A stretch of DNA of 50,891 nucleotides, taken from NCBI RefSeq assembly GCF_001194135.2, contig NC_069003.1, positions 27,886,991 to 27,937,881 of the forward strand. Reading direction: 5' to 3'. A program made the translations under genes and the position numbers. This document shows, in pieces, positions 4,703 through 47,104 of the stretch. This DNA is from Octopus bimaculoides. Lineage: Eukaryota. A model generated the notes under the pieces. That model searched no databases. It was not told where the DNA came from and worked only from the letters and a program-made list of their open reading frames with translations. How positions within the stretch are numbered: the stretch's first letter is position 1; every line of letters starts with the position of its first letter.

Positions 4703-5499
4703 ATTAGGCTACCCTATCTTTTATTTTGTTGTTAGTCTATTTGGCAAGAAGAATTTTTCTATTGTAGACAATGAGTTTAGTGTATTAGAGGGATTACAGA
4801 AGAAAGTTTATCATATGGATTATCACGTAATTATGAGTTCTGAGTTCAGACCTGGCTACTGTAATATGTAATTCTGTAAATTTGTTTGCATCAGCAAGTT
4901 ACTACATACTAATCTCAGTTTCCTGAACCACTTAACTTCAGCATAGGAAAGTGGAACATTTAATGTTTCCTTTTACATAAAGATAATTATGAAATCAATC
5001 AATAAATATGAGACATCAAGATTAAAACCCAATAGTAGAGAATGTCCATAAAGATGACAATCATGAATGACTTAATAAAAAATATAGTTGTTGGTGTGAT
5101 GAAAATTTCAGCACATTTAGATTAGTTACCAAGACAATTTGATACATTTAGCTTGAGGAGTGGTGATGGTGGGAACACTAGATGAATTTTACAAGATCAA
5201 GAGGAAAATAAAGTAAAACAAGATAAGGATACCAATATTTTTTTTAAAGCTGTTCTGGTCTATGAGGACTAAAACTGTTCTGTGTAGCTTCTACAACAAC
5301 AAATGTTTTACAAGCCAATGGTGGGACCTCTAAGTGGTTGTTTCAGCCTATTAGAAATAGCAGTCAAATCTCCACAACCTCATACACACACTGAATTGAA
5401 TTTTAAAAAGTGGATCATGTGTATAAAATATTTGAAAAATGGATAACATACATGGTATATTCCATAAATTTTGCCGCTCTTTCAGATGAGACATTTATT

Positions 5500-5760
5500 A
5501 ATTTCAAAGTAGGATCCTCTGATTTCAATGCACTTGTAGTACTCCGTCCACTTCGTGGAGGTCCCATGGAAGTCCCCCAATGTGAAGACGTCTAGGACCC
5601 TTGTCACAGCCTCCTTAATCTTCTCAGTATCTTCAAAACTAATGCCCTTTAGTTTCTCCTTCAGCTTGGGGAAAAACCAAAAGTCACTAGGAGTAAGGTC
5701 TAGCCTGTTGCGAGGGTGAGGGACAACTTTAAATTCTCATTGTTGTCAAGTAGTTAGTCA
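5500..5760 (-). mobile_element. Mariner transposase C-terminal remnant
   Basis: The minus strand translates to KVVPHPRNRLDLTPSDFWFFPKLKEKLKGISFEDTEKIKEAVTRVLDVFTLGDFHGTSTKWTEYYKCIEIRGSYFE. This matches the mariner HPPYSPDLAPxDFWLFPKLK motif and the KCI...GxYFE C-terminus. Confidence 0.9.
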
Positions 5761-14831: not shown

Positions 14832-15610
14832 GTGAGTATTGTGAAGTAGGACTTTAATTGCTCATTATAGAAGTGATTATGTTGTTAATGTTGAAAAAAT
14901 TGATAATGTTGTGAAGGTGCTAACGGCCAACACGTGTGATGATGTGACAATATGTTGGACATATCATGAAAAACGGTAATAATGGTTTAATGGTGGTGTT
15001 TGCGATGATATAATATTGCAGTGTTATTGATAGATGGTCTCGATGTTGCTTAGAAATGCACAACTAGCTATAGGCTTGCTTCTTTTTAATATTATATGAA
15101 TATGGAAAATGTATTTCAGTATTGTTTTTTCTGTGCACCCAACAACTTTTAGATGTGACAGATATTTTTGTACACTTATACAGTTGCTTGTATGTGTGTA
15201 CCTAGTTGTGTTTATTGCTTTAATGATAGATGCACATTCTTTTATAAATTGCTTTTTGTAATTGTAAGTCCTTATAAGACATTAATATAGTACTGGGTAA
15301 AGTGAAAAGTTCATCCCTAAATCTTAGGAACCTCTCTTCTTCCTTTATATGGTTAAAAATGTGCATTTTAGTCTTACTTTTGTGTAAATAGCTTTACTAT
15401 TATTTCAATGTATTATTATTGTTCTGACAGTTGACTATTGTGCAAGATATCAGATTCAGTCCCTACATGTGCTTGAGACTTTCTTTTGCAGATTCTATTT
15501 CAAACATTTTAATTATAAAATCCACCCCTCCTTTTTTTTTTTTATCGATTTAAAAATAAAACAAAATTTAGTGTAAGCTAGATTCTGTTGTGTTGCAATT
15601 TTAAAGCCAT

Positions 15611-15855
15611 TTAATCATTGAATATCAGAACTTTTACAGCTGTTATTCATTGGATATCAGAGCTGTTATAACCCTTAATCATTGGATATCAGAGCTGTTA
15701 TAACCCTTAATCATTGGATATCAAACCCATTATAACCCATAACCATTTGATATCAGATCTTTATAGCCCTTACTCAATGGATATTAAAACTTTTACAGCC
15801 TTTGTTCATTGGATATTAGACCTATTATAGCCTTTAATCATTGGATATCAGGCTC
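15611..15855. repeat. 32-bp minisatellite, about 7-8 diverged copies
   Basis: Unit ttaatcattggatatcagagctgttataaccc, with two adjacent near-identical copies and diverged flanking copies. Confidence 0.9.
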
Positions 15856-17559: not shown

Positions 17560-18240
17560 TTCATCAGCTTTTACTTCCACTATTTTAAACTTTGCCTCCA
17601 CTCTGTCCATACCTCTCTCCTCCACTCTCTTCATACCTCTCTCCTCCACTCTTTCCCTGCCTCTCACCTCCACTCTCTCTGTACCTCTCACCTCCATTCT
17701 CTCCATGCTTCTCACCCACACTCTCTCCATGCTTCTCACCCACACTCTCTCCATGCTTCTCCCCTCCACCCTCTCCATGCCTCTCGTCTCCACTCTCCTC
17801 ATTCCTCTCACCTCCGCTTTCCTCATTCCTCTCGCTTCCACTCATTCTTCTTGCCTCCACTCCTCATTTTTATCACCACCTCTCCTCATACCCCTCACCT
17901 CCACCCCCCTCATTCCTCTCACCTCCACTCTCCTCATACCCCTCACCTCCACTCTCCTCATTCCTCTTGCTTCCACTCCTCATTCTTCTTGCCTCCACTC
18001 ATTTTTATCACCACCTCTCCTCATACCCCTTGCCTCCACTCTCCTCACACCCCTCACCTCCACTCTCCTCACACCCCTCGCCTTCACTCTCCTCACACCC
18101 CTCGCCTCCACTCTCCTCATACCCCTCGCCTCCATTCTCCTCTTACTCCTCGTCTCCACTCTCCTCATACCTCCACTCTCTTCCTCCATTGCCTCCACTT
18201 TAGACATGCCCTCCAATCTCTTCAGCCCTTCCCTTCACTA
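17560..18240. repeat. 24-bp C/T-rich minisatellite with a higher-order duplication
   Basis: Unit about cctccactctcctcacacccctcg (8-codon periodicity, RRVEARGV on the minus strand). The marker tttttatcaccacc recurs about 135 bp apart (about 17867 and 18002). Confidence 0.9.
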
Positions 18241-23994: not shown

Positions 23995-24375
23995 AATGAA
24001 CAGATTGTACAATGCTTGTCTTTGAACTTCAATGCTGCATGGTAGTGAGACATGGGCCTTGAATGCATAGGTCTTGAGAAGACTGGAAGCAAATGAAGCT
24101 GGCATGCTCTGCTTAGGTGTGCAATGTAAGTGTGCATGACTGATAAGCTATAAAGTACAAGAAGAGTCAGGTGTAGTGTGCATGAAAGAAGACTGTGCTG
24201 GCATGGACATATGATGTATATGGATGAGGACAGGTGTGTAAAGAAGTTCTGTTTACTTAATGAAGATGGAGGTTGCAAAAGAGAGAAACTTAGGATGACA
24301 AGAAGTGAAATGGTAAAGATTGATCTCAGAGCCTTGAACTTCATGGTGAATAAAGGACATGCTCATCAGAGAAAT
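23995..24375 (+). mobile_element. Degenerate RTE LINE ORF2 C-terminal fragment
   Basis: Frames give LYNACL*TSMLHGSETWAL...RRLEANEAGML and ERRLCWHGHMMYMDEDRCVKK, homologous to the younger copy at 31114-31389. Confidence 0.85.
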
Positions 24376-30676: not shown

Positions 30677-31389
30677 CATCATCATCATCATCATCATCGT
30701 TTAACGTCCGCTTTCCATGCTAGCATGGGTTGGACGATTTGACTGAGGACTGGTGAAACCGGATGGCAACACCAGGCTCCAGTCTGATTTGGCAGAGTTT
30801 CTACAGCTGGATGCCCTTCCTAACGCCAACCACTCAGAGAGTGTAGTGGGTGCTTTTACGTGTCACCCGCACNNNNNNNNNNNNNNNNNNNNNNNNNNNN
30901 NNNNNNNNNNNNNNNNNNNNNNNNNNNNNNNNNNNNNNNNNNNNNNNNNNNNNNNNNNNNNNNNNNNNNNNNNNNNNNNNNNNNNNNNNNNNNNNNNNNN
31001 NNNNNNNNNNNNNNNNNNNNNNNNNNNNNNNNNNNNNNNNNNNNNNNNNNNNNNNNNNNNNNNNNNNNNNNNNNNNNCCCGCACAAGCCAGTCCAGGGGC
31101 ACTGGCAACGATCTTACTTGGCTTGCCGGGTCTTCTCACGCACAGCCCATTTCCAAAGGTCTCGGTCCGTAGTCATCGCCTCGGTGAGGCCCAATGTACG
31201 AAGGTCTTGCCTCACCACCTCAGCCCAGGTCTTCCTGGGCCTACCTCTTCCACGGGTTCCCTCAACTGTTAGGGTGTGGCACTTTTTCACGCAGCTATCC
31301 TCCTCCATTCTCACCACATGTCCATACCAGCGCAATCGTCTCTCTTGCACGCCACAACTGATGCTTCTAATGTTCAGCTTTTCTCTCAT
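30677..31389 (-). mobile_element. Relatively young 5'-truncated RTE-clade LINE (ORF2 C-terminus, 3' UTR, (TGA)n tail)
   Basis: ORF 31114-31389 is uninterrupted: REKLNIRSISCGVQERRLRWYGHVVRMEEDSCVKKCHTLTVEGTRGRGRPRKTW... (RTE RLRWYGHV and RGRPRKTW motifs). The (ATC)n tail lies at about 30677-30698. Confidence 0.92.
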
Positions 31390-31990
31390 AGAAATATATT
31401 AGTATTTTTGATTACCATCTTTAGAATATTAGTATTACATTTTGACTATGATCTATGAACTGTTGCTTTCCTATGTTCTTTACATCAACCGTCACTATTC
31501 TGATCACATCTCATTACATTTTCAAATTTCTTAATTCAATATTTTAGAAATACTAGAAATCCGTTTCTAACATCTACTATTTCACCTAAATAAGAAACTT
31601 TATTCATGTAAACTATCATTGTTTTAGCTTCTGGCATTGATAAGTTAATAGCTTGCCTAACAAACATTTAGCTATAGATATCAGGTTATCGTGTGGCAGA
31701 GTATAATGCATAAATTGAACAGAAATTCTGTTTATGTATGTCAAATAAAAATTGAAGATCAAAATATGCAATATAAATTATAATAATTTTGAAATAATAA
31801 ACCAACTTTCAGATTCTATACATTTAAGTGCTATTACAGAAAAAAAAAAAAAACCTCCCTTCAAACTACATAACTCTGTTAGAACTAAATCGATTCCATT
31901 AGCATTTCATTTAATGGACTNNNNNNNNNNTAGCATTTCATTTAATGGACTGGAATTTGTCTATTCCCAAACATTTTGAGCTGTTTTTCA

Positions 31991-32038
<48 letters not shown>

Positions 32039-32994
32039 CAAATTAAAACCTATACTATACTATACTGTTAAGGCTTCTGTTGATGATACTATCCATACAG
32101 ATGTATATTTTTTTCTGTTATATTTTTGTTACTTCGTGATAGAGGGTGTCATAAACTAACACCATAACCATGAACAAATCTTTTTTTGCTACTTAGAATT
32201 TTATCTTTGAACATAGCATACATGCACACACATACACACACACTTTCACTATATAGAATACAAATCAGTTTCAATTATTAACATTTGGAACTTAGCAAGG
32301 TTATAACCAAATTTTGATATTAAGATTTTGAGAATTAAGATGAAAGTTGTAAAATATTAAACAATTATCTGAAATGAGTGTTTCTTTGAAGAGTGGTTTA
32401 ATCCTGGCTTTCTTCACTCACATAAATGTAGAGTATTTTATTGAACTATTTATAACTTAGTTCTTTAGCAGAATCACATCAAAGACATATTTTAGCTTTG
32501 CAGTTGATTCATATAATATCCAAGTATATTTCAAAATATTTTTCCTACCAGCATTTCACTGTATATTTTTGATCATATGCCATGATACAAACAACAAATG
32601 CACCTTGTTGTTATAGTGTGTACATGTATGTATGAACTCCCATACAATGGTTAATATAAGATGAAAGATCTTAGATAAAAGCCAAATGTTCATGTTTTAT
32701 TACTACTGCACAAATTCATTTTAATATGTTGGTTTATTGATTAAGCAGACCTATAATGAAAGGCATTGTTGCCATCACCATCCTGTCTTGTTGTTTAGAG
32801 GTACTATAGTGTTTAATGAGTCCTTCCTTTTGTAAGACATTAGAGTGTCATTCAAGAGAGATTCTGTTTCACTTTCTAGCACTTTAAGTGACCCAATAGA
32901 AGCTACTTTGTTAGCACAATATTATATAGCATGCTAATAAGAATGTATAATTACTATAAAGTGAGATATTGAAATAAATAAAGTGGCATTTGTA

Positions 32995-33260
32995 TAACTA
33001 AAGGTATGACTGTGTGATAAGAAATTTGCTTCCCAACCACATAGGTAAGGGTTCACTCCCCTGCATGGCACCTTTCACAAGTGTATTCTACCATAGCCTC
33101 AGGCAGACCAAAGCTCTGTGAGTGGATTTGGTTGACAGAAGGGAACTGAAGCTTATCGTGTGTGTATGTGTGTGTATTTGTGTGTAGTAAGGCGCTACAG
33201 GTATGGTTGTGAGATAAGAAGCTTGCATCCCATCCACATAGTTCTGGGTTTCATATTGAC
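32995..33260 (+). mobile_element. SINE family 1 fragments
   Basis: Head gactgtgtgataagaaatttgcttcccaaccac..., with a second head at about 33195. Confidence 0.8.
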
Positions 33261-33269
33261 ATAAGGGCA

Positions 33270-33724
33270 CCAGTTTCATCACCAGTGACAATGCAGTAAA
33301 AAAGCGCTGTTTATGGCCATGTGTTGATCAATGTTGAGCAAGTAAACTGGTGGCGATTGTGGAGCATTGATTTTTGTTGTTTTCGCTCAAAGTGTGTGGC
33401 ACCCAAGTGCCAAGTTTGTAAACCTTGCCCATTGAGTAAAGGTGGTTCATCACAGTTTTTTTTTTTATCACAATCCATCTGCTACACTAATTCTCTGGTC
33501 GTTTGATGTGGATTTTCGTGAAGAAGTTGATTCAATTGCTCTTCATCGAACTCAATTGGTCAACCAGTGTGTGATCCATCCTACAGCAGGCAGTACTTTG
33601 AGACATTGCTCCTTCTCCATACACAGCACAAATCTCATGAGCAGCTTCAGCGGCCTTAACACCATGTTTAAATGCAAAAAGCAAATGGTGTTGAAAATGC
33701 TGTTTTGTCTACTTGACATTCCAT
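33270..33724 (-). mobile_element. Mariner (Mos1-like) transposase N-terminal remnant
   Basis: With frameshifts it reads MECQVDK...FAFKHGVKAAEAAHEICAVYGEGAMSQSTA...FDEEQLNQLLHENPHQTTREL...LGTWVPHTLSENNKNQ...IVTGDE. This covers the HTH, the WVPHxL motif and the first catalytic Asp. Confidence 0.9.
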
Positions 33725-34831
33725 TTTAATGATCTGAAAATACACAAAAATCAATAAAATTAAAAAATCAAAACATCATCTTATAGAGCAAAAAATTCTC
33801 TTTTAAATAACAAAACATTTTATCAGTGTATTTTATTTCTGTATGCATTTTTAAGTTTGAAAAAAAAAAAAAAGCTCATGAATTATTCCTCAACCTAATA
33901 CTTCTACAATATACAAAATATTTTAACAACTTTTAAATACAATTCCTAATAATATTTAATTATAAAGGATATAATAGGATTTTTTAAACATGGAGTGGTT
34001 ATGAGAGTTCACTCAAGTGAAATAGGAATCACAGGGATCTAGAGGCAAAAAATGGTTGAGAACCACTATGTTAAAGCATAACTTTAGTTCTTAAATTGAC
34101 TAAAGTTGCCAAGTGTTTGATATCCTGTTCTAATTTACTGTGATTTTCAGTAAAATACACATAAAGTGTGTTAAAGTGAAATAGATTAGAAAAAAATTGT
34201 TTGTTTTTATTAGTGACTGAAGGTGCAGTTATCTTCAGGAGACATAATTTGAATACTTTTGATAGAGGATCCTGCTAAAGGTATCTAAGGGCCAAGTAGT
34301 GATGTCAAACCTGGCAATGGATTAAGTCCAAGAAAAAAATTAACTTTCTCAACAGATTTCAACAACTTCTATCAACCAAATTTCACTCACAAGGTTTTGG
34401 TAAACTTGAGGCTGTGTGTGAAGACAAATGCCCAAGTCACATGGTAGAACTGAACTTGAAACCATGTAGTTGAAAAGTTAACTTCTTATCGACACAGCCT
34501 TACTTACTTTCACCCAATATACACATACATACATACATACAGTGTGCTCCTATAACATACAAGACAAATGTCACATATTCTTTACTATATATACAACATA
34601 CACTTACTATTCATTCTACAGTACAACCCCATATATATATATATATATTGAAGATCTGAAAATTTTTATTAATCACAACACATGGTGTATGTATGTGTGT
34701 GAGCGTGTGTCTGTGTATATATATATATATATATATATTTCAAGGGTTGAATTGAAAAATTTGATGTAAACATAATGGAGAATTTCACAAAAACAAATGA
34801 AAACGTGTATATATACATATCTGTGTATGTA

Positions 34832-34918
<87 letters not shown>

Positions 34919-35961
34919 ACATTGTATAACAATTGACAATATGTCAGAAAATCTACATGTAATTTATGAGCAATTTTTTTTGTCTTCCAATAAAATTCCA
35001 AGGAATTAAAACTTAGTTAAAGGCTGTCTGTGTTGATGTTATGTATTAATAGTTACAATCTATTACAACTTGAACAATTTTTAGTTTCCTTTAGGCTGAG
35101 CTTTATTAAAATTCTTTTTTATATAAATAAACTTTCCTTTGTCTGTCAAAACAATAATTGACTCGTCTGAATATATCAACATGTCTTATGAATAGGGTTT
35201 ATTGATTCAGAAAATAGCCATAGTCGGACACTAAATCTGATTGACTCATGTCTGAATACCGCTATTCTTTCTCTATTTAAATTAAAAACATCACAAAGTT
35301 TTTCACAGCATTAATGTTTTCTCAGTGGAATATTATTAAAATATTTATTCATAGGTTTTCTTCCTTCGTAAAATTAGTTACAATCTGTACACAATGCAAT
35401 AGATCTTCAACAATTGAATATAGCCAGATTAATAATGTTTTTCTTGCTCTGTGAAAATGTTCTAGTTTGCAGCTGGACATTTTCATTTGTTGGTCTAAAG
35501 TATATAAGTGGATTTATGAACTGCAACAGAATTGCTATTATATAGAATTTCTTACAAATTAACAACTAGTATTTTAACAAAATCCATATTAAATACCTCT
35601 TTCGAAGTAACAATTTGAAATTGAAACAGGGTACACTGACTGGCAAATTGCAGACTTCTGTATATTGCTTGTCAGGCAGGTGACCATGATAGTAATTACA
35701 TTTTAGGCTCATAAGGCCTTTTAGCAGCTTAAGAATGAGGATTGAATTTATTAAATTTTTTTTTTTTTATTTAACAACTCATCAAACTTAATCTTTTGTC
35801 CCAAACTGCTAACACATATATTCACACTCATTTCATATTAATAATCAACAAAAGTTACAGAGTGACTCAAAGGTTGTGAGTTTCATCCATTGGTACTTAC
35901 TAATAAAGGAATGTCTATATGCTCATGTTTTAGTTCTAGTTTCCCTGTATACATCACCATA

Positions 35962-36036
<75 letters not shown>

Positions 36037-37133
36037 ACACACATTATATACGTTAATATCAAACAATGAGAATGAGTGCTCAACACTACATTGGTGGATA
36101 AATGGTCTTTATTTGCCGGTTAATGAGGCTACCAACAGTTTCATGTGAGACATTCTTTACAGTTGTTGAAGCATATCACATGAGAATGTACTCATCTCCA
36201 GTTTGGATGAGAATACATGCGTGCACACATACACACACATGCACTTACATATTTGTTGAGTTTCTCCATATTCATTACCCCTTTTTGTCATTTTCTTCCT
36301 TTTTTTTTTTTTTTGCTGCCAGACATTACTCTCCCATCCCCTTGTCCTTTATTGACATCCACCACTTTTACTATATGTCATCTTTATGGCTTTCCACCAC
36401 TCTCTTCATATCACACATCCATCCTTATTGCTGTCTCATCATATCACACATGCTACTTTCATTATTCAGTCTCCTTACCAGTACATATCTATCACTGTCT
36501 ACTTTAATATTACTTTCTCCTCTGCTTAATTATGAAGTAAAACTTGTTCTTATTTAGTCTTAGACACAGTTAGGTCAGTATACTCTTTACTGAATGCTAG
36601 ATGAAAAATATGGACAGCTAAGAAAAGTTTTGCTTGAACTACTGATATTTTGGGCCAGAATCTTTAATTCTTCAACAGTTGTGCAATGCATCATCTTCAT
36701 CTTAAGTCTGCTTTCCATACTAGCATGAGTGGGATGGGTCATCATGATTCAAGTCAGTTCCTATTTGGAGTTGCTGTCCTCTTAGAGTTGGTAGGGGGAC
36801 CATACTTTGTTGAATTTCTTTTATTCTTATAATTATAGATGGAGCAGTTATAAACATTCATTCATGAAATATATTTTTAATATGTGGTATTATTACCATT
36901 CCTATTTATTTTCATTATTTCTCATAAAATTCCTTTTCCATTGGCCAAAATGTTCTTTTCAGTTCATTAAATTTCACACAACTGTTTTCTTTTAGCATTT
37001 CTAAAGCATTTTCATCAGAAGTTATATGAATTGTTGAACTTTCTTTTCTAACAGAAAGTGCCTGTTAACTCACATTTCATTTCAAATTTGCTTTTGTGGT
37101 TATTAACTAAAAATAACATGTCTACTAAGCAGA

Positions 37134-37179
<46 letters not shown>

Positions 37180-37674
37180 ATTACAATTGCAGGTCTGTTA
37201 TAAAAGCACACTTCACTGACTCAAAATTTCAATGATTAAACCATTTATCATGATTATTTTGATTTCTATTCTTCCATCGGGCATATTGTTGACCATATTA
37301 CTTATGAGCGGCTATATTTCTATTTGAAAATAAATCTCTTTCTAATTATGGTGGCCAATTCTCATATATGTTTCTGCCACTTATATGAGTTCAATTGTAT
37401 ATTTACATTGCCATTGTGTTGTATTCTTTGTACTTAATATATTATTCGGGGAAATTACTTTTAGGTTTAAATCTCTGTTTAATATAATACTTTTCTGTAA
37501 TTAACCATCATTGATTAGTTGAACAGTTTCCTCTCTTTTTTTTTTTTTTGTTGCTTGCTTTGTTTTGCAGTACCAGTTTCTGCGGCTTATTTCAATATAC
37601 TGTGTTATAAGTTGGTTATCATACTTGGCAATTGGCCCTTATGAACTTCTTGTTTATAGAGAATTAGAGTTACA

Positions 37675-38135
37675 CAGGCATGGCTGTTTGATATGGTTCC
37701 AGGTTTGATATGGTTGACATGGTCCTGGGTTCAGTCCCTCTGCATGGCACTTTGGACAAGTGTCTTCTACTCTCAGGCCAACCAAAGCCCTCTGAGTGGA
37801 TTTGGTAGATGGAAACCTTCAAAATTCTAGTCATATGAATAGACCACAGTAATTATTTTTAAAGCCTGGTGCTTATTCTGTTAGTCTCTTTTGTCAAACG
37901 ACTAAGTTATAGGGATGTAAACAAACCAACACTTGTCAAGTGGTGGAGGACAAGCATAAACACTAAGACACACACACATGACAGGCTTCTTTCATTTTCC
38001 ATTTACCTATCAAATCCATTCACCAGGCTTTGGTTGGCCTGGAGCTATAGTAGAAGACATTTGCCCAAGGTGCCATGCAGTGGGACTGAACCCGGAACCA
38101 TGCAGTTAAATAGCAAACTTCTTACCATACCTACA
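37675..38135. mobile_element. Inverted pair of family 1 SINEs (+ about 37675-37820; - about 37860-38135)
   Basis: The + head ...ggttcagtccc...ggacaagtgtcttctact is complementary to the - head ...agtagaagacatttgccc...gggactgaacc. Confidence 0.8.
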
Positions 38136-38720
38136 CCTTGTGTAAGTTTGTTGTTAAATAACAAGGTCAGACTTGACTGAGATATAGCAGTCATGACTAC
38201 TCCATCCTTCTTTTAGCCATTTCTCATCCAAAATTACTTTATTCAGTGTCCCTTTGCCAGATGGTATATTGTAATTTGAACTAGGGAGCTATTTTTAGCA
38301 GGTTTAGTGACCAGCTAGAGGTTGTCTCTTTGTGTAAGGTGGAAGAGTTCTTAAAATAATTTCATTACCAAAGAGTTATTTCCGATAGAATTTGTTTGTC
38401 TTCTATCACAAATACACCTGAGGTACATAAGCATAACAACAACAAACTTTGTCATTGTTCATCTTCACATCTAAGAAGTTTCCTGCCAATCTAAGATATT
38501 ATTCAACTACAATATTCTGCTTTAGTTAAAGCAGTCTAGCATCAGCTGCAATTGGTTCTCTCTGTATTCTACTTTTTAGACATAGCGATGAGAGGCATAT
38601 TCAAATCTAGTTATATACTTAGATTTATATGAATATTTCAAATGATAAAATACTAATACTAAATGCTCAGTAAATCTTCCGAGAATTATATTTGCAATTC
38701 TTCAGAAATCAATGAGACTA

Positions 38721-38805
<85 letters not shown>

Positions 38806-39300
38806 TGTGTGTGTGTATCATTTCTGCTTCAAGACTTTAATTCACTAGTTCTGTTATAAATTCTTTGATCTTTCACTACTCTCTATTATTCTTTACACTT
38901 ATTGAACAATGATTCTCTTTTAAACACACAAGACATATATCACTCACTGCTAACAAAATAGAAAAAAAAAAATTAAAATAAAAAAGTAATTTTCTTCATT
39001 TCATGTACTGTGAATGTTTATTCCTGTTCGTATTTATATAAGTTCAGTATGGCCATGGAAATAAAATTAAAAGACTTCTCTTGTTGGTGCTTGTTTGTTA
39101 TAAAGAATGTTATCTGTGCCGTTTCTAATAGTAGCTATTTTGATGCAATTACCACTTTAAAAATAAATGTTGTTTATTAAATCTCTACATTGATATTACT
39201 GTAAAATATATATGCTGTATTCTCAATGGAGGTTTAAGAAATATACCTTGAATATAATTAAGAAAAAAAAAAAACCCTGATCGATTTAGTAAAAATAATT

Positions 39301-39361
39301 AATTTCTTCCTTTTTCTGTTCTTCTTTCAGGTAAGTACAAGATTTGTTAAATATCGTAAGT
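39301..39361 (+). other. Candidate recursive splice site (AG|GT at 39330/39331) with a 25-nt cryptic exon
   Basis: A roughly 27-nt polypyrimidine tract ends ttctttcag and is immediately followed by GTAAGT. A second GTAAGT lies at 39356-39361. Confidence 0.45.
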
Positions 39362-41262
39362 AATGTTTCCTATCAGATTCTTGTTTTTCTCAAATTACAA
39401 CATGGTCCACGCAACAGACTACTTCATATTGACTTACTATTAAAATATCAGTTACCATCCTCTACTACTATTACTACTACTATTATTATTATTATTATTA
39501 TTTACTACATAAATCAAGTTTTCTCACTCTTTTTTTTTTAACATTATTCTTATTTGTTCTCTATCACAATTTCACTTTGATAAATGTCACATGGGTATAA
39601 ATCAGAATCCTAAAACCAATTTCCATGTTTTTTTTTTGTTGTTGTTTTTGTTGTCTTTTTCTTGTTATCCCCCCCCCCCNNNNNNNNNNNNNNNNNNNNN
39701 NNNNNNNNNNNNNNNNNNNNNNNNNNNNNNNNNNNNNNNNNNNNNNNNNNNNNNNNNNNNNNNNNNNNNNNNNNNNNNNNNNNNNNNNNNNNNNNNNNNN
39801 NNNNNNNNNNNNNNNNNNNNNNNNNNNNNNNNNNNNNNNNNNNNNNNNNNNNNNNNNNNNNNNNNNNNNNNNNNNNNNNNNNNNNNNNNNNNNNNNNNNN
39901 NNNNNNNNNNNNNNNNNNNNNNNNNNNNNNNNNNNNNNNNNNNNNNNNNNNNNNNNNNNNNNNNNNNNNNNNNNNNNNNNNNNNNNNCTTTAAAACTCTT
40001 AGAAAGATGGTAAGGGAGAAATGGTAAAGTTTGAACTGTCTGATTAAATCCAATTCAGCACATAGAATATATTAGTTTAAACTGAAATAAAATCCAACAC
40101 AGTTACTTGAATGATAACATAAAACTCTCATTAACACCACTTTTCAATGAATTAGTTTCTGATTTTTAGAACCATAGTAAAGAATTATTCTTTGGGGCTT
40201 ATTTTTATAGTTATGTTGAGAAATATGTTTATCAAATAATATCTTATTACAAACAAAAAAAAAAAAATGTAATTCAGGGGGGGGGGGAAAACCCCATTAA
40301 TAAGTGCATTATTGTTTTCATGTTTGGAAATAAAATAATTTTCAGAAAGTTATGATATCAATATATTACTGATATTTATTCCTGTGACCCTCGAGGATTG
40401 ATGACTAGTAAAGTAAGCCCTCATATCTGTTTGTCTAATTAATAAAATATTATGATGTTATAATTGATCTATTGTCACTCTCTTTTGTCTTAGGAGTGAA
40501 TTATATTACATTGCAGAATATAACAATGTATAATTATACTGACTAATTTGTTTATAGTGGAGTTTATTTCTCACCGAGTACCATTGGAGAGAAAATCATT
40601 GTTATCAGATTGGCTATGAAAATTAATATTAGCTGTATGTCATTAACCTTTGACTGAATGTCACTCTTTTCTTTTCTTAATATTATCTCTTTCACATCCT
40701 AACCATAGTAATGAGAATGAAATATTATTAACATTGGCTTCAGTTATCTTGAATTTAGAATTAAACCTAAAATACTTACTATTGATTTTTACACCGTATT
40801 GATGCAATTACCTAAACTGTTTTACTTCATCTAGTCTTAGAGTCTCTGATAACAATGATTCTCTCTCCAATGTTGATATAGATGTGTGAAACTTAACATC
40901 TCGTTTCCTACCAATTATATTTTTACTTTCTATTAGTTTTGTCCTTATGAAACCTTTCCCACACCATCATAACAGGTGTCTTTCATCTGTGTTACTTGAT
41001 TCAGCTGTGTTTATTTATATTCTCTTTAAGCATTTTAAAGAATCTACAAAGTACCTATAGAAAACAGTAACAAGGTGATAAAGTAACAACTAACTGTTGC
41101 TGTCACCCTATAACATAATTTAACTGGTTTTTGTCTTAGATCAACACTTGATTGATACTGAAATAACTTAACACTTTCACTTGGCAACTATGGTCTTTCA
41201 GTAGAATCTCCACTGTTGCAGTCAGTTAGACAAGGTTTGTGGTTTGAAGATAATTCAATGGC

Positions 41263-41494
41263 TTAACTCTTTTGATACCAACCCGCCTGAAACCGCCTCT
41301 GGCTCTGTAGTACAAATGGCTTGTTTTCAAAAGTTCTGAATCAAAATCCCCCACCAAACCTTAATCACAATTTATGTTCCTAAAACACTAGCTTAATGAT
41401 AACTGAGTTGTTTTTCTAAATTCTTTGTTATATTTAGAATTAATTGAAAGACACATAGTGCGTCTCAACAGAAATATGGAAACAAAAGGGTTAA
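41263..41494 (+). mobile_element. piggyBac-type MITE family B
   Basis: TTAACTCTTTTGATACC...ACAAAAGGGTTAA termini with TTAA flanks. Confidence 0.75.
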
Positions 41495-42264
41495 TGGGTT
41501 GTTTTTTATTGTCGGTTCTTCCTTTTTATGCCACCAGTCTTGCAGATCATTCAAAAGATTAGGGACATTGCCATTATTCTCAGAACTAAATCTTTTTTTT
41601 TTAAATGATAAAACAATAATTATCAAAACTATATTCCTTGTTATATTTTTTTTTAAATGTTTTATCTTTTGTTCATTATAACAGAGGAATTCATATTTAT
41701 AATAGATTTTGAGAGATTTTCTTAGTAAGGGAGTCTTTTTATGAACATTACACAATAAACAGTAAATGGCATTTGGACAGCCAGTCTGATAAATCAGTTG
41801 ATGAAGTAATCAACCTCCTGTGGTAAGATTTATTTATTCATTTATATAAGCAGACTATCAAACTACAAGAGACAAGGGTTCATCAAAATTTACTGGCAAA
41901 ATATACCAAACATATTTCAGAGTTATCTGCCACTGACAAGTAACCTGTCATTTTGATTAAGCTTTGTTTACATTGTATCATAAAGATCAGCTATTTTATT
42001 TAATATTGTATAGGTGATGTTGTATCTTATTAAAACAAGACTCAATTTCTCAAATACTGTTATAACAACTAACAGTCATTTAATGGCAAATAACATGTTT
42101 GTCAAAACAAGCATAATGGAGCCTGTGTCTGCTCTCGTATATTTCGATTAAATTGCACACTTTCTAAGAAATTAATTACTTAGTAAATTCCCAAGTCCAA
42201 TCATTTGCCTGATTTTTCAAACTCTGTAATCATTATTTTATATATTTACCAAATGAAATTGTAT

Positions 42265-42604
42265 AGGCACAGAAGTGGCTGTGTGGTTAGAAGTTTGCTT
42301 CCCAACCACTTGGTTCTGGGTTCAGTCCCACCACATAGCACCTTAGGCAAATGTCTTCTACTATAGCCTCAGGATTTTGTAGAAGGAAACTAAAAGAAGC
42401 CCTTTTACTTGTTTCAATCATTTGACTGTGGCCATGCTGGAGCTCTGCCTTAAAAGGGTTTTTAGTCAAAGAAATCGACCCCAGGACTTATTCTTTGTAA
42501 GCCTAGTACTTATTATATTGGTCTCTTTTGCCAAACCGCTAAGTCAGGGGGATGTAAACACACCAACATCGGTTGCCAAGTAATGGTGAGAGGAAAAAAC
42601 CCAG

Positions 42605-42636
<32 letters not shown>

Positions 42637-42785
42637 TTATGACAGACTTCTTTCAGTTTCCACCTATCAAATTCACTCACAAAGCTTTTGTTGGCCTGAG
42701 ACTATAGTAGAAGGTACCATGCAGTGGGACTGAACCTGGAGCCATGTGGTTGGAAAGCAAGCTTCTTACCACACAGTCACACCTG
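42265..42785. mobile_element. Inverted pair of family 1 SINEs (+ about 42265-42375; - about 42400-42785)
   Basis: About 100-bp complementary SINE heads, about 320 bp apart. Confidence 0.8.
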
Positions 42786-43867
42786 AACCTATGAATTATG
42801 TGTTTTCATCATGCAAGTGTTGTCCTTGATTTCCAGTCTTCTGTGAAACATGTCTAGCTATAAGGAAATATCATTATGTTTGTTTAGAAATGAATGAGGG
42901 TTGGCAACAGGAAGATCATGTAACTATAGTACTGAGAGACAACAGGGTCATGCCATTAGCAGGATGGTGAAGAGGGGGTGTCAGAGAGAAATGGGACGCT
43001 GTGTTAAGCTAAGTTGGGAGGAATGAACAGGTAGAAAGAAGTGATAATTGGGGAAACCAAAAGCTGAGAATGAAAGATGACAGAATTGGAAAATGAAGAA
43101 AGAATGATGGGAAATATAGAAAAAGGACAAAAAAGATACAATGAAAATAATGATGAGAAACTGAGGTAGTGTGAAAGGTTTTAATAGACTACATGAATAG
43201 TGAACCCCAGAAATTTTTATTTCAAATTGCTTCAATGAATTTTGTCTAACCCATGCAAGCCTGGAAATGTAGGAAATAAATGATGATAAATGATAATGAT
43301 GAATGTTTACATTGTGGTTTTTTAAGTTAGTCGTTCACGAAAGATGATATCAGCATGGTTCTGTATTTTGTATATATTGATATAAATTTTATCTTTCTAT
43401 CAAATTAGTTATCAACATTCCTACCACACATTTTCTAAATTACAGACAACTACATTTAATGTTTATTACTTTAAATGGAAGTACTTTATGCTTTATCTTT
43501 GGAAATTTCTGTTGGCACAGATTTAACAGCGATTGTTGAACTTGCGCATGGAGAGTGGTTTTATCGCAGTCTAAAATGTTTCAATATTTTGGTAGTATTT
43601 TTATTTATAGGTTATTGTTAGCATAGGTGTAGTTGTGCGGGTAAGAATTTTCCTTCCCAACTACATAGTTTCATGTTCTGTCCCATTCATGAATCAGTGT
43701 TCTGATATTTGTAGAGCCCTATACAATGCTGTCTGTGATAAGATAAAGACAAAAGTAGCAGTAATTGGTTCAATATCATTAACGTATTCCATTAGTTGAT
43801 TTTAAGTATTAACTGTTGGAGTGCCTTTTAAAACTGGAATCAATTGAACATGTTTAGTGTTGATCAC

Positions 43868-44170
43868 CATCATCATCTTCATTTAATGTCTGTTGTCCAT
43901 GCTGGCATGAGTTGGACAATGTGACCAGAGCTGGCAAGCTAGGAAGCTGCACCAGACTGATTTGGCATGGATTCTACAGCTGGATGCCCTTCCTAGCATC
44001 AACCACTTTACAGAGTGTGCTGGATGCTTTTACATGTTGTCTCATGAACACTTTTATGTGGTGCTGCACTGGTGCTTTTATGTCACCACATGGGTGCTTT
44101 TATGTGGCACCACCATGAGTGCTTTACACAACCAGAAGGATTGGTCTTAACACTTTTGTTTTGGAGTATG
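43868..44170 (-). mobile_element. RTE LINE 3' UTR fragment
   Basis: catcatcatc...gttgtccatgctggcatg...ggatgcccttcc...gtgcttttatg tandem units, homologous to 30677-30870. Confidence 0.8.
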
Positions 44171-44987
44171 GGTCTTCTTGACATATGTATGATCTTAAAG
44201 CTGACCATTTTTGTAAGTTCCTACTAGCTAATGATGCTTATTACTCACAAAATACCTCATATACCCTAATATAAAATATGCTTTGAACAACAAATATACA
44301 GTCTACTTAATTTCATAATTTATGATTGTATTGTATATAAATATTGTAACAAAATAAATGGCAATATTTGTTTAATATTTTCTCTCATATAACTTCAAAC
44401 CTCATTTGGTTTTCCATTTCTGTGAGGAAATAAAGAATTATTTTTTCTTCTTAATCTAATCATTAATAACACGAGTAGCTCAATATTGAATAACAACATG
44501 TACTATTAGAGTTATTGATTAAAATATTCTCTAATGTTGCAATATTCAATGGGTATTAGGTTTTTATATTGAAGTTATTTTTTTAAATAAAACCTATAAG
44601 TTTAGTGATACTCAATCCATTAAATACACGAGTATATATGTGTATGTATTTATATACATATATGAGTGTGTTATATAAATGCTATGTTAAATGGTTAAAT
44701 GTTCGCATTTATTCTAAACCTTATCATTGTGTCTATTAAAGTACTTTAAGACTACAAATTCTCATTTGCCCTTCTCTTGAAATGAACAATTTATTGATGG
44801 TCTTTAATGGATAAATCTGACAAGAATTAAAACAAAGATATTCCTTGCAGTTAGATTTTTATTAATACTTTTCCCTGCATGCTTTCATTATATTTGGCAT
44901 GTTATTTAAGGATTACATTATACGTGTTAAGAGATAAACATATCTAGTAACTCTTATTTGAAATTCCAAATAATAATGGAATTCAAG

Positions 44988-45265
44988 TAGAAGTATGGGT
45001 GTGTGGTTAAGAAGAATGTTTTCCAACTGTATGGTCTTTGGTTCAGTACCACTGTGCAGGACCTTGGGCAAATGTCTTCTACTATAACTCTGGGCCAACC
45101 AAAACCTTGTGAGTGGATTTGGTAGATGAAAACTGAAAGAAGCCTATTGTATATTTATATATTTGTTTTTATATGTATCTTTGTGTTTGTATTGTATGTT
45201 TGTGTCCCCACCCTAGAACCATGTGACTGGGAAGCAAGCATCCTGCCACACAGCCACACCAGTGC
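44988..45265. mobile_element. SINE family 1 (+) with a short inverted head fragment (-)
   Basis: + head at about 44988-45150; - head accatgtgactgggaagcaagcatcctgccacacagccac at about 45218-45260. Confidence 0.75.
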
Positions 45266-47104
45266 CTGTGTTTATAAATTTATAACAAGTTTCATTTTTC
45301 TAACAAAAGTATGGCAATATGGTCAAATCTGCAAATTTCTCCAAAAGTCTTTGTTGCATACTGTTAAAGGTAAATCAATGTGTCTAAGGTATAAGTTTAG
45401 GAACCTTTGATATTATGTAGTGTAAAGCCTTTCCTAAAGAGAATTTTATTACAAATGTTTTTCTCAGATATGAAAAATCTTAAAATTCAGTGATTACAAA
45501 AAGCCAATATATTTACTTTATTTCTTGAAAGCTTTTAAGATTTATTCAGCATATGAATTATATGTCTATTCATAATTTGAAATAGAACAAAAAAAAAATT
45601 AATTAGATTTGAGAGCTATTTGAATCAGACCATCTGTTTGTTCTTTAAGAGAGGTTTAATTAAATCTGACTTAATCTAAGAACACAGAATATCATCTTTT
45701 ATTTAATTTTACTTTTCGGTTTTTGAATAATCTAAAAAAAATTGAAATAATTGTAGAGTAAATTCTACATGTTTGTCAAAGTTTCTGTAACTGTCAGAAT
45801 TTAGAAATTAAAATGAAATCAAATAAATTATTATAATTAGCAGATGATGGTTCATACAAATATACTTGTGTATTACAAATGAATTTTCCTATGAAGCAAT
45901 AAACAGTATTTTCAGCTAATCAATATTTAGTAGTTGTTTCTTTGTAAACTGAAAGCAAGTTGACCTTCAGATCAACATTTTTGATATTTACATTTTGATC
46001 TCACATTTACTACAACATATCTACTATTACTGAGTTGTGAATTACTTCTGACATATTGGTTGTTGAATGTCATTTTTATTTTATTTTATTTTATTTTTTG
46101 CTTGCTTCATTGCATGGTTAGTTCTTTATTCATCATCATCATCACTTTCTCTTTGGTTTTGATGCCAAGTTGTTTGAGAAGAACATCTATTAATTCAGAC
46201 TTGGTCATTCATTGATATTTCTACTCTTCTAAATACCACTTAATCTACTGCTAATATTGCTTTTTCCACACGTCAATAGTATAAACATAACCTTTCAAAT
46301 AGACAAGGAAATATGCTAACTTTATTGCAAATATGTTTTAATACTTGTCTATACTTTTATATCATTTTGTTCTAAAGTTCTAAAACAGAAATATTCTTTT
46401 CACCCTATAGCACCTAAATTATCATTATGGTGAACAAAATAATTCATAAATCTTAAAGCATGACTGTAAAAGTTACTGTGGCTCTTAACTATTATAAATA
46501 TTTATATAAAATATTTGTTGTTCAATGTAAATTTTCTTTCTGTTATAGTAGTCGAAGTATCAAGAATTAACATGAGGCATTATAGGGTTAGACGGGGCAC
46601 TGTGTTTTGTCATGGAGAAAATTTCTTGTAGACAAATGATGTAAATACATCAAAATCAGCTTGCAGACTGAGATGCAAGCATTTTAGAGTGGTTGTCTCC
46701 TCTTCAGTCACAGAAACTGGACAGGGTGCACTGCGAGCGGATAAGAGTGATTGTCTCTCTTACAATATTCCAGTCATTGTACAAAGACTGGTAGCACTAA
46801 CCGGTGGCTCACCATTAACAAATTACGAAGTGGTAGTGCTAAGCTTAGTGCTACCACCATGTAATATAGGGTTAAAATATCTAACTAAAGTATAACACAA
46901 TTTTTGTACATCTATTTGGGAAACATATTTTATCAATAATTACTGACATTCAGTGTTGCCTATTTTACATGTCAGTAGTGATTTGAATTGACAGGTTTTC
47001 TTATTGGAAATAGTTGTAAATCACTGAAGTCATTCTTTTCTTAGTGGGTGGTTTCTGAGGAATAAACATTTAACTAACTTTCAAATGTATTAGGAAATGA
47101 AGAG

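What the first reader, a model, noticed from the sequence alone, without database searches (positions are those of the whole stretch)
39290..39365. Textbook recursive-splicing (ratchet) point with a 25-nt cryptic exon
Seen: an AG-free run of about 40 nt ends in a strong pyrimidine tract (tttcttcctttttctgttcttctttcAG), immediately followed by a perfect donor GTAAGT (39331-39336). A second GTAAGT sits 25 nt later (39356). Established: juxtaposed 3'SS/5'SS plus a downstream cryptic donor defining a short RS-exon is the architecture of recursive splicing in long introns of Drosophila and vertebrate neural genes. Inference: a + strand host gene with a long intron may be spliced recursively here. 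I am not aware of recursive splicing being documented in cephalopods. The 25-nt exon would shift the frame if included.
Basis: partly seen in the sequence, partly recalled or inferred. Interest (0 to 1): 0.7.

Follow-up and report, generated by a model that had tools for sequence, protein, structure and literature searches.

The report
Unproven recursive-splice motif in octopus intron
The sequence is a letter-perfect "ratchet point" (an intron end fused to an intron start) in a stretch that is transcribed on the right strand and looks like a long intron, but no read shows the site in use, so it remains a credible, untested candidate for the first recursive splice site in a mollusc.

Summary
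A 26-nt pyrimidine tract (39303-39328, one purine) ends an AG-free run. It is followed by AG|GTAAGT (39329-39336) and a second GTAAGT 25 nt later (39356). This is the best of 280 AGGT sites in the window. About 0.006-0.017 such cores are expected by chance per window, and about 20-fold fewer with the second donor.

Template-switch (SMART/10x-type) cDNA runs show + strand RNA over at least 31.4-45.6 kb, with no exon detected. Position 39330 is not an ordinary exon end, because contigs read straight through it.

The decisive evidence is missing:
- No junction or lariat read at 39331 was found in any run.
- Three bulk RNA runs have essentially no reads here.
- A saw-tooth cannot be judged from 3'-primed cDNA contigs.
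- AG|GTAAGT is unchanged in four related species, but they differ at only about 3% of positions per species, so this says nothing.
- The host gene was not identified.

My estimates are about 0.45 that the site is used recursively at a real level, about 0.4 that it is an inert chance motif, and the rest for other readings. It would extend a known mechanism to a new phylum. Interest is moderate.

The parts
39299..39303 (+). Branch-point-like TTAAT, with the candidate branch A at 39302, 28 nt upstream of the AG
   Evidence: Fly recursive branch points lie at -21 to -36 with a peak at -30 (Duff et al. preprint). This rests on sequence only; no lariat read was seen.
39303..39328 (+). Polypyrimidine tract of 26 nt with one purine (G at 39318). 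It ends the AG-free run 39290-39328. T at both -5 and -6.
   Evidence: In relatives 39318 is C or T in two species and G in two, and 39328 is T in one, so the acceptor stays YAG.
39329..39330 (+). AG of the putative intronic 3' splice site
   Evidence: Unchanged in four related species, but that is not informative.
39331..39336 (+). GTAAGT, the donor that would be regenerated after an upstream exon is joined to 39331 (ratchet-point donor)
   Evidence: No junction read, loose end or lariat at 39331 was found. One X14 contig begins at 39331 with a single unmatched letter beyond it; this is unexplained.
39331..39355 (+). Putative 25-nt cryptic RS-exon. It would shift the reading frame and has stops in 2 of 3 frames.
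   Evidence: It is shorter than the ~50 nt typical of fly cryptic RS-exons (PMC8605326).
39356..39361 (+). Second donor GTAAGT, which would define the RS-exon
   Evidence: It reads GTGAGT in all four related species (39358 A>G), which is still a consensus donor.
39263..39274 (+). A12 run where cDNA contigs from the left stop (38828-39234, 38855-39249, 38956-39260). It acts as an internal oligo-dT priming site on + strand RNA.
   Evidence: A template-switch-oligo loose end lies at 38947 in + orientation.
31440..45598 (+). Minimum extent of the + strand, exon-free, intron-like transcribed region around the site
   Evidence: cDNA peaks lie to the left of A-runs at 31840, 33860, 40255 and 45589. 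There is no comparable peak to the right of T10 at 41593. Bulk RNA is about 0 on unique sequence. T exceeds A on the + strand in nearly every 2-kb step of the window.
39680..39987 (.). Assembly gap (308 N), 350 nt downstream of the site. Its true sequence and length are unknown.
   Evidence: cDNA contigs run 85-144 nt into the gap from the right.

Best explanation
The site is a splice-competent ratchet point: a strong intronic 3' splice site fused to a consensus 5' splice site. It lies on the sense strand of a long, exon-free, intron-like transcribed region.

Proposed working, all inferred:
1. U2AF and U2 recognise the 26-nt pyrimidine tract and the branch A near 39302.
2. U1 at the 39356 donor helps define a 25-nt cryptic exon.
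3. The upstream exon is ligated to G39331. This regenerates exon|GTAAGT.
4. That donor then removes the rest of the intron, including the 25 nt, so nothing remains in the mRNA.
5. Use of the 39356 donor instead would insert a frame-shifting 25-nt poison exon.

Shown here: the motif, its rarity, + strand transcription, the intron-like context, and the unspliced precursor across the site.

Not shown: any splicing event at 39330/39331, the host gene, or selection on the motif.
For: Every sequence feature of fly ratchet points is present.
- A prominent pyrimidine tract, TT at -5/-6, YAG|GTAAGT, a branch-point-like motif at -28, and a downstream donor (features taken).
- The site is top of 280 AGGT sites and the only one with a downstream GTRAGT.
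- Chance expectation is 0.006-0.012 on the + strand, and about 0.06 of that with the second donor.

The strand and context fit.
- cDNA peaks lie to the left of five + strand A-runs and not to the right of a T-run, and the template-switch oligo joins in + orientation.
- No exon was found. The RNA is absent from bulk runs but present in template-switch cDNA runs of this species. The orthologous sequence is partly held (14-27% of sampled words) by RNA-type runs of a second species. This fits nuclear precursor RNA of a long gene.

Weaker points.
- All four substitution events inside the 59-nt core in four relatives keep the signals: G39318 to C and to T, C39328 to T, A39358 to G.
- cDNA depth is lowest just upstream of the site (5-15) and 10-30 times higher 0.7-0.9 kb downstream (157-316), next to A-runs of similar length. 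This is the direction a saw-tooth predicts.
- In human, sites whose regenerated donor is strong are the ones that show saw-tooth behaviour, and 60% of strong-acceptor AGGT sites have at least some junction reads (PMC6110456).
Against: - No joint, loose end or lariat at 39331 was found in any of the 11 same-species runs and one organism-B RNA-type run laid on the site (X12-15, X24, X25, X34, X35, X42, X49-51).
- Contigs from X13 and X25 cross the site unspliced.
- Power was very low: 0 bulk reads on the site, and otherwise only assembled contigs of 3'-primed cDNA.
- Conservation is not above background. 25 of 448 aligned positions vary among the relatives, 3 of 59 in the core. Zero changes in 13 strictly constrained positions is expected 47% of the time.
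- The 25-nt RS-exon is about half the typical fly length, and very short exons are harder to define.
- The depth jump is confounded by priming efficiency and by the assembly gap.
- The host gene, its exons and the intron length were not established.
- Recursive splicing has not been reported in any mollusc.
- In human only 16 of 36,870 motif-bearing sites show a saw-tooth.
Confidence: 0.45

Rival explanations
1. An inert chance motif. In T-rich, AT-rich intronic DNA a low-complexity pyrimidine tract happens to abut a GTAAGT hexamer, and a second GTAAGT happens to lie nearby. The spliceosome ignores the site or uses it only as rare noise, and it has no function.
For: - No splicing evidence of any kind at the site.
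- Unspliced contigs cross it.
- No conservation above the flanks.
- Pyrimidine-tract acceptor-like sites are common on this strand: 20 in 49 kb.
- The tract itself attracts low-complexity matches from elsewhere in four genomes: depth is 2-4 times the flanks at 39294-39337.
- At 0.009-0.017 per 49 kb, a genome of about 2.7 Gb would hold roughly 500-900 such cores by chance.
- The site was picked after the fact by a reader scanning for striking patterns.
- In human the great majority of motif-bearing sites show no strong recursive splicing.
- A 25-nt exon is poorly suited to exon definition.
Against: - The full architecture (tract, TT at -5/-6, branch-point-like motif at -28, AG|GTAAGT, second donor at +25) is expected only about 5e-4 times per window.
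- It lies on the transcribed strand of a long intron-like region, which is where real sites lie.
- Both donors are perfect consensus, and every substitution seen in relatives is compatible with the signals.
Confidence: 0.4
2. An ordinary alternative or poison microexon. 39331-39355 would be a real 25-nt cassette exon, spliced in through the 39330 acceptor and the 39356 donor in some cells. Its first six bases would merely resemble a donor.
For: - A strong acceptor and a strong donor flank 25 nt.
- The template-switch cDNA libraries that hold this RNA may be neural. That is my guess and is not on record.
- Microexons of 27 nt or less are a known neuronal class (PMC8797185, by title and abstract).
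Against: - No spliced contig or joint at either 39330 or 39356.
- 25 nt shifts the frame, and two of three frames contain stops.
- Zero bulk RNA reads.
- There is no UGC-type motif next to the acceptor. The nearest is TGT at 39317-39319, and its G is replaced in two relatives. That such a motif is expected at neuronal microexons is from my own knowledge.
Confidence: 0.07
3. The site is not in a pre-mRNA intron. The + strand RNA would be a long unspliced non-coding or read-through transcript. Alternatively, a separate transcript starts in or near the assembly gap, which would explain the 10-30-fold depth jump. In either case there is no upstream exon to ratchet from.
For: - No exon was found anywhere in the 50.9-kb window, and the host gene was not identified.
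- Depth rises sharply between 39.26 kb and 39.99 kb, across the gap.
- The X49 run holds all of 39988-40267 but has no contig on the unique sequence of 38810-39455, only short low-complexity matches at the A-rich stretches.
Against: - + strand cDNA peaks of comparable depth (25-120) exist upstream at 33.4-33.7 kb, and the stretch 31440-31839 is fully held by X14 and X50. Transcription therefore does not begin at the gap.
- The same stretches appear in RNA runs of a second species, as expected of a conserved long gene.
- The T-over-A skew runs through the whole window.
Confidence: 0.08

Closest known systems
Drosophila zero-nucleotide ratchet points (Ubx, kuz, Bx and others; Burnette 2005, Duff 2015, Joseph 2018, Pai 2018)
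   Same: - Juxtaposed acceptor and donor, (Y)nNCAG|GTAAGT.
- TT at -5/-6.
- Branch-point-like motif near -30.
- A short, out-of-frame cryptic exon closed by a second donor.
- Position in a long intron-like region on the sense strand (features).
   Different: - Fly sites are defined by junction reads, a saw-tooth in total RNA, lariats, and conservation about twice that of control AGGT sites. None of these is shown here.
- The cryptic exon is 25 nt against about 50 nt in flies.
- The organism is a mollusc, where the mechanism is unreported.
Vertebrate recursive splice sites with RS-exons in long neural genes (Sibley 2015; Zhang 2018, PMC6110456)
   Same: - AGGT with a very strong acceptor.
- A regenerated donor at least as strong as the RS-exon donor. 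The second donor is GTGAGT in the four relatives.
- An RS-exon carrying premature stops.
- A large, repeat-rich genome with long introns.
   Different: [quoted passage not shown]
- Here conservation is uninformative and reads are lacking.
- In human most motif-bearing sites show no saw-tooth (16 of 36,870).
Intronic pseudoexons and poison exons
   Same: Good splice-site consensus on both sides of a short non-coding segment deep in an intron, with no trace in steady-state mRNA.
   Different: A generic pseudoexon does not begin with a consensus donor. That feature is specific to ratchet points.

Membership tests
Recursive splice site (ratchet point) | [quoted passage not shown] | tested here: met
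   cttcctttttctgttcttctttcag|GTAAGT. 21 of 22 positions from -25 to -4 are pyrimidines. It is the best of 280 AGGT sites.
Recursive splice site (ratchet point) | TT at -5/-6 of the acceptor (99.5% of fly ratchet points) | tested here: met
   Positions 39325-39326 are TT. This is kept in all four relatives.
Recursive splice site (ratchet point) | Branch point 20-50 nt upstream, confirmed by lariat reads | tested here: inconclusive
   TTAAT with its A at -28 is present. No lariat read was seen, and the data in hand could hardly have shown one.
Recursive splice site (ratchet point) | Lies on the sense strand inside a long intron of an expressed gene | tested here: inconclusive
   + strand RNA over at least 14 kb without an exon and no exon in 50.9 kb. 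The host gene, the flanking exons and the intron length were not identified.
Recursive splice site (ratchet point) | Short cryptic RS-exon closed by a downstream donor that is no stronger than the regenerated donor | tested here: met
   The second donor lies at +25. It is GTAAGT here and GTGAGT in four relatives. At 25 nt the exon is shorter than the ~50 nt typical of flies.
Recursive splice site (ratchet point) | Junction reads joining the upstream exon to the first base after the AG | tested here: inconclusive
   None in the 12 runs laid on the site. The bulk runs gave 0 reads on the site, and the rest are assembled contigs of 3'-primed cDNA.
Recursive splice site (ratchet point) | Saw-tooth of nascent or total RNA density that resets at the site | tested here: inconclusive
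   Depth is 5-15 just upstream and 157-316 at 0.7-0.9 kb downstream. This fits in direction. It rests on a few internal-priming peaks and spans an assembly gap, and no total or nascent RNA run was available.
Recursive splice site (ratchet point) | Conservation of the AG|GT core above that of the flanking intron | tested here: inconclusive
   The core is identical in four related species. They differ from the window at only 2.5-3.6% of positions, and 3 of 59 core positions vary against 25 of 448 overall. More distant genomes cannot be reached with these tools.

The most novel reading that the evidence does not exclude
This is a genuine, regularly used recursive splice site in a long neural gene of an octopus. 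It would be the first documented in a mollusc or any lophotrochozoan. It would have a Drosophila-type consensus and an unusually short 25-nt cryptic RS-exon. That would imply ratchet-point splicing is either ancestral to bilaterians or re-evolves wherever introns grow very long.
Probability: 0.3. Interest if true: 0.55.

Novelty: new member of a known kind. Interest (0 to 1): 0.4.

Why it matters
Recursive splicing is documented in flies and vertebrates. Both use it in very long introns, often in neural genes. Cephalopods evolved large genomes, long introns and complex nervous systems independently.

A verified ratchet point with the fly-type consensus in an octopus would show that the mechanism extends to a third major animal lineage. 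It would also give a concrete locus for asking whether the mechanism is ancestral or convergent. In addition, it would flag a class of cryptic out-of-frame exons that gene annotation and RNA-editing studies in cephalopods should account for.

If the site is inert, it is a useful caution: in a 2-3 Gb AT-rich genome, textbook-looking motifs arise by chance in the hundreds.

Tried and rejected
I then used stretches free of long microsatellites (map).
- Bulk paired-end RNA runs X24, X34 and X35 gave 0 reads on 39010-39440 and at most 0.6x on unique sequence of 39988-45980. They look unstranded, so they gave neither junctions nor direction.
- X12 at first looked like RNA that crosses the site. Its uniform 8-16x over all unique sequence shows it is DNA-like, so I dropped it as evidence of transcription.
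- More cDNA runs (X49, X50, X51, X42) added no coverage at the site.
- Exon hunt: stop-to-stop ORFs in six frames and Pfam scans of the 20 most protein-like ORFs. These found only a Mos1 transposase HTH fragment and no host-gene exon.
- Rfam and tRNA scans of the window found nothing.
- A self-BLAST showed the site is not part of a repeat within the window.
- The idea that 39330 ends an ordinary exon is rejected. There is no ORF, contigs run colinearly through it, and there is no bulk RNA.
- The idea that the two GTAAGT arose by a local 25-nt duplication is rejected. Beyond the shared GTAAGTA, only 5 of 18 positions match (my own comparison of the sequence), and the second donor is GTGAGT in the relatives.
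- The four - strand AGGTAAGT sites, considered as exon ends of a - strand gene, are rejected. None has supporting context, and transcription is on the + strand.
- Sibley et al. 2015 could not be fetched. Its numbers are taken from PMC6110456.

Full report
**1. The observation**

Reading 38900-39800 confirms every coordinate.
- The last AG before the site is at 39288-39289.
- 39290-39328 is AG-free.
- 39303-39328 is a 26-nt pyrimidine tract with a single purine (G39318).
- AG is at 39329-39330, GTAAGT at 39331-39336, and a second GTAAGT at 39356-39361.

Three further features belong to the same picture. T occupies both -5 and -6. A branch-point-like TTAAT has its A at 39302, 28 nt before the AG. 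The 25 nt between the two donors shift the frame and carry stops in two of three frames.

**2. Is it more than chance?**

- AGGTAAGT alone is not unusual: 5 observed against 1.98 expected, with the other four on the - strand.
- With six pyrimidines in front, the pattern occurs once against 0.01 expected from dinucleotide shuffles.
- Shuffles destroy the T-rich low-complexity tracts of real introns, so I also used the window's own counts. There are 20 acceptor-like sites on the + strand and 9 on the - strand. An acceptor-like site has at least 16 of 20 pyrimidines, no AG, and YAG. GTAAGT occurs 30 times in 98,320 positions.
- This predicts 0.006 cores on the + strand (0.012 for GTRAGT) and 0.009-0.017 on both strands.
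- A second GTRAGT within 100 nt multiplies this by about 0.06.
- The site is first of 280 AGGT sites on a simple score (33 against 26). It is the only one followed by another GTRAGT.
- It is not a repeat copy within the window.

For one window the motif is clearly non-random. For a genome of about 2.7 Gb (size from my own knowledge) the core alone would occur some 500-900 times by chance, and a few tens of times with the second donor. The motif is therefore a lead and not proof.

**3. Context: strand and kind of region**

No protein-coding exon could be found.
- Six-frame ORFs are SINE, LINE and mariner debris.
- Pfam recognises only a Mos1 HTH fragment at 33535-33708 on the - strand.
- Rfam and tRNA scans are empty.

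Three deep bulk RNA runs of the same organism were each sampled at about 6%. They put 0 reads on 39010-39440 and at most 0.6x on unique sequence of 39988-45980.

A group of runs of unknown type (X13, X14, X15, X49, X50) does hold this DNA.
- One X15 contig carries GGTATCAACGCAGAGTACATGGG joined to 38947. This is the 3' end of the SMART/10x template-switch oligo (identification from my own knowledge), so I read X15 and the runs grouped with it as oligo-dT-primed cDNA.
- Their contigs stop at genomic A-runs of the + strand and lie to the left of them:
  - 38828/38855/38956 to 39234/39249/39260, before A12 at 39263 (depth 10-15; 5 in X50).
  - About 39844 to 40256/40267, before A13 at 40255 (depth 316 and 157).
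  - 45223/45238 to 45598, before A10 at 45589 (depth 271 and 113).
  - 33372-33740, before A14 at 33860 (depth 23-121), against 4-9 on its right.
  - 31440-31839, before A14 at 31840, is held 100% by X14 and X50.
- The one clean T-run (T10 at 41593, T9 at 41646) has only 6-7x on its right.

Internal priming on A-runs marks the RNA strand, and the template-switch oligo is joined in + orientation. The RNA is therefore on the + strand and spans at least 31.4-45.6 kb.

- T exceeds A on the + strand in nearly every 2-kb step of the window, in keeping with this.
- The same stretches are partly held (14-27% of sampled words) by RNA-type runs of a second species.
- X12, which also crosses the site, covers all unique sequence evenly at 8-16x. 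It is DNA-like and does not count as transcription evidence.

The region behaves as a long intron of a + strand gene seen through nuclear precursor RNA. The gene itself was not identified.

**4. Direct tests of recursion**

- X13 (39279-39433) and X25 (39266-39416) read through 39330/39331 colinearly. The unspliced precursor exists and 39330 is not an ordinary exon end.
- No joint, loose end or lariat at 39331 appears in any of the twelve runs laid on the site.
- One X14 contig begins at 39331 with a single unmatched letter beyond it. Other runs do not repeat this, so I leave it unexplained and give it no weight.
- cDNA depth is lowest just upstream of the site and 10-30 times higher at the next A-run of similar length downstream. 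Upstream at 33.5 kb it is intermediate.
- That is the direction a saw-tooth predicts. It rests on five internal-priming peaks of unknown efficiency and spans a 308-N assembly gap, so I treat it only as a hint.

These data have almost no power to see short-lived intermediates. Duff et al. found 46 recursive lariat reads in about 10 billion reads.

**5. Conservation**

Four related species have orthologous contigs over about 38976-39455. They show 13-18 substitutions each, or 2.5-3.6%.
- AG|GTAAGT is unchanged in all four.
- 25 of 448 aligned positions vary overall and 3 of 59 in the core.
- Zero changes in the 13 strictly constrained positions is expected 47% of the time.
- The changes that do occur all preserve the signals: G39318 to C in one species and to T in another, C39328 to T, and A39358 to G at +3 of the second donor in all four.
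- Four compatible events out of four is only weak support.

**6. Comparison with known systems**

The site matches the sequence definition of Drosophila ratchet points point by point. It also matches vertebrate RS sites that carry RS-exons.

It differs in two ways. The cryptic exon is very short, 25 nt against about 50 nt. More importantly, none of the functional criteria has been shown: junction reads, saw-tooth, lariats, or conservation above background.

The human data frame the prior. 60% of strong-acceptor AGGT sites in long introns have at least some junction reads, but only 342 are candidates and 16 show a saw-tooth. Those sixteen are the ones with the strongest regenerated donors. Here the regenerated donor is a perfect GTAAGT.

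**7. Verdict**

The third (no conservation and no intermediate reads) is formally half met, but with data too weak to count.

Weighing the rarity of the full architecture on the right strand of an intron-like region against the absence of any usage evidence, the short exon, and the lack of precedent in molluscs, I estimate:
- 0.45 that the site is used recursively at a real level. Within this, about 0.3 that it is a regular, selected ratchet point.
- 0.40 that it is an inert chance motif.
- 0.07 that it is a cassette or poison microexon.
- 0.08 that the RNA is not a pre-mRNA intron.

No paper in the searched library reports recursive splicing in octopus, cephalopods or molluscs. If true, this would be a new member of a known kind in a new phylum. 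That is interesting but not astonishing to a splicing specialist.

Noticed in passing
window 17594-18200: CT-rich minisatellite with 24/48-nt units and about 12-17 copies. It gives the strongest GC skew in the window (-0.44) and produces long, proline/serine-rich pseudo-ORFs.
   Followed up: no
window 15599-15851: Tandem array of a 32-nt unit (about 8 copies, 79% matches; also scored as a 95-nt period).
   Followed up: no
window 33535-33708 (-) and 5485-5736 (-): Mariner/Mos1 remnants. The first has an HTH_48 domain (E = 1.4e-13). The second is an ORF that looks like a transposase C-terminus but has no Pfam hit.
   Followed up: partly
window 31117-31398 (-) and 24154-24375 (+): Two ORF remnants that are 46% identical over 61 aa (E = 1e-16). 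Their motif RLRWYGHV..MEED suggests tails of a LINE-type retroelement. They lie in opposite orientations.
   Followed up: partly
window 42188-42787, 43788-44187, 44988-45187: Copies of a very abundant SINE-like repeat. Word depth is 1e4-1e6 in both DNA-like and cDNA runs. In raw RNA reads laid there, A>G is the commonest class of difference (8-9 places against 2-4 T>C). This could be A-to-I editing or simply divergence between copies.
   Followed up: no
window 8167, 12770, 23132, 30440 (- strand): Four AGGTAAGT on the - strand against about one expected. None has a pyrimidine tract or a downstream donor. I treated them as chance.
   Followed up: partly
window 39331-39467: An X14 cDNA contig of 138 nt begins exactly at 39331 with one unmatched letter beyond it. 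Nothing comparable is seen in X13, X15, X49, X50 or X51. It is probably a read-start artefact but remains unexplained.
   Followed up: partly
window 39670-40288: The 308-N gap (39680-39987) is bordered by C10 on its left, and a G10 run lies at 40279-40288. The strongest cDNA peak of the region (depth 157-316) runs from inside the gap to the A13 run at 40255. The true sequence and length of the gap matter for any saw-tooth analysis.
   Followed up: no
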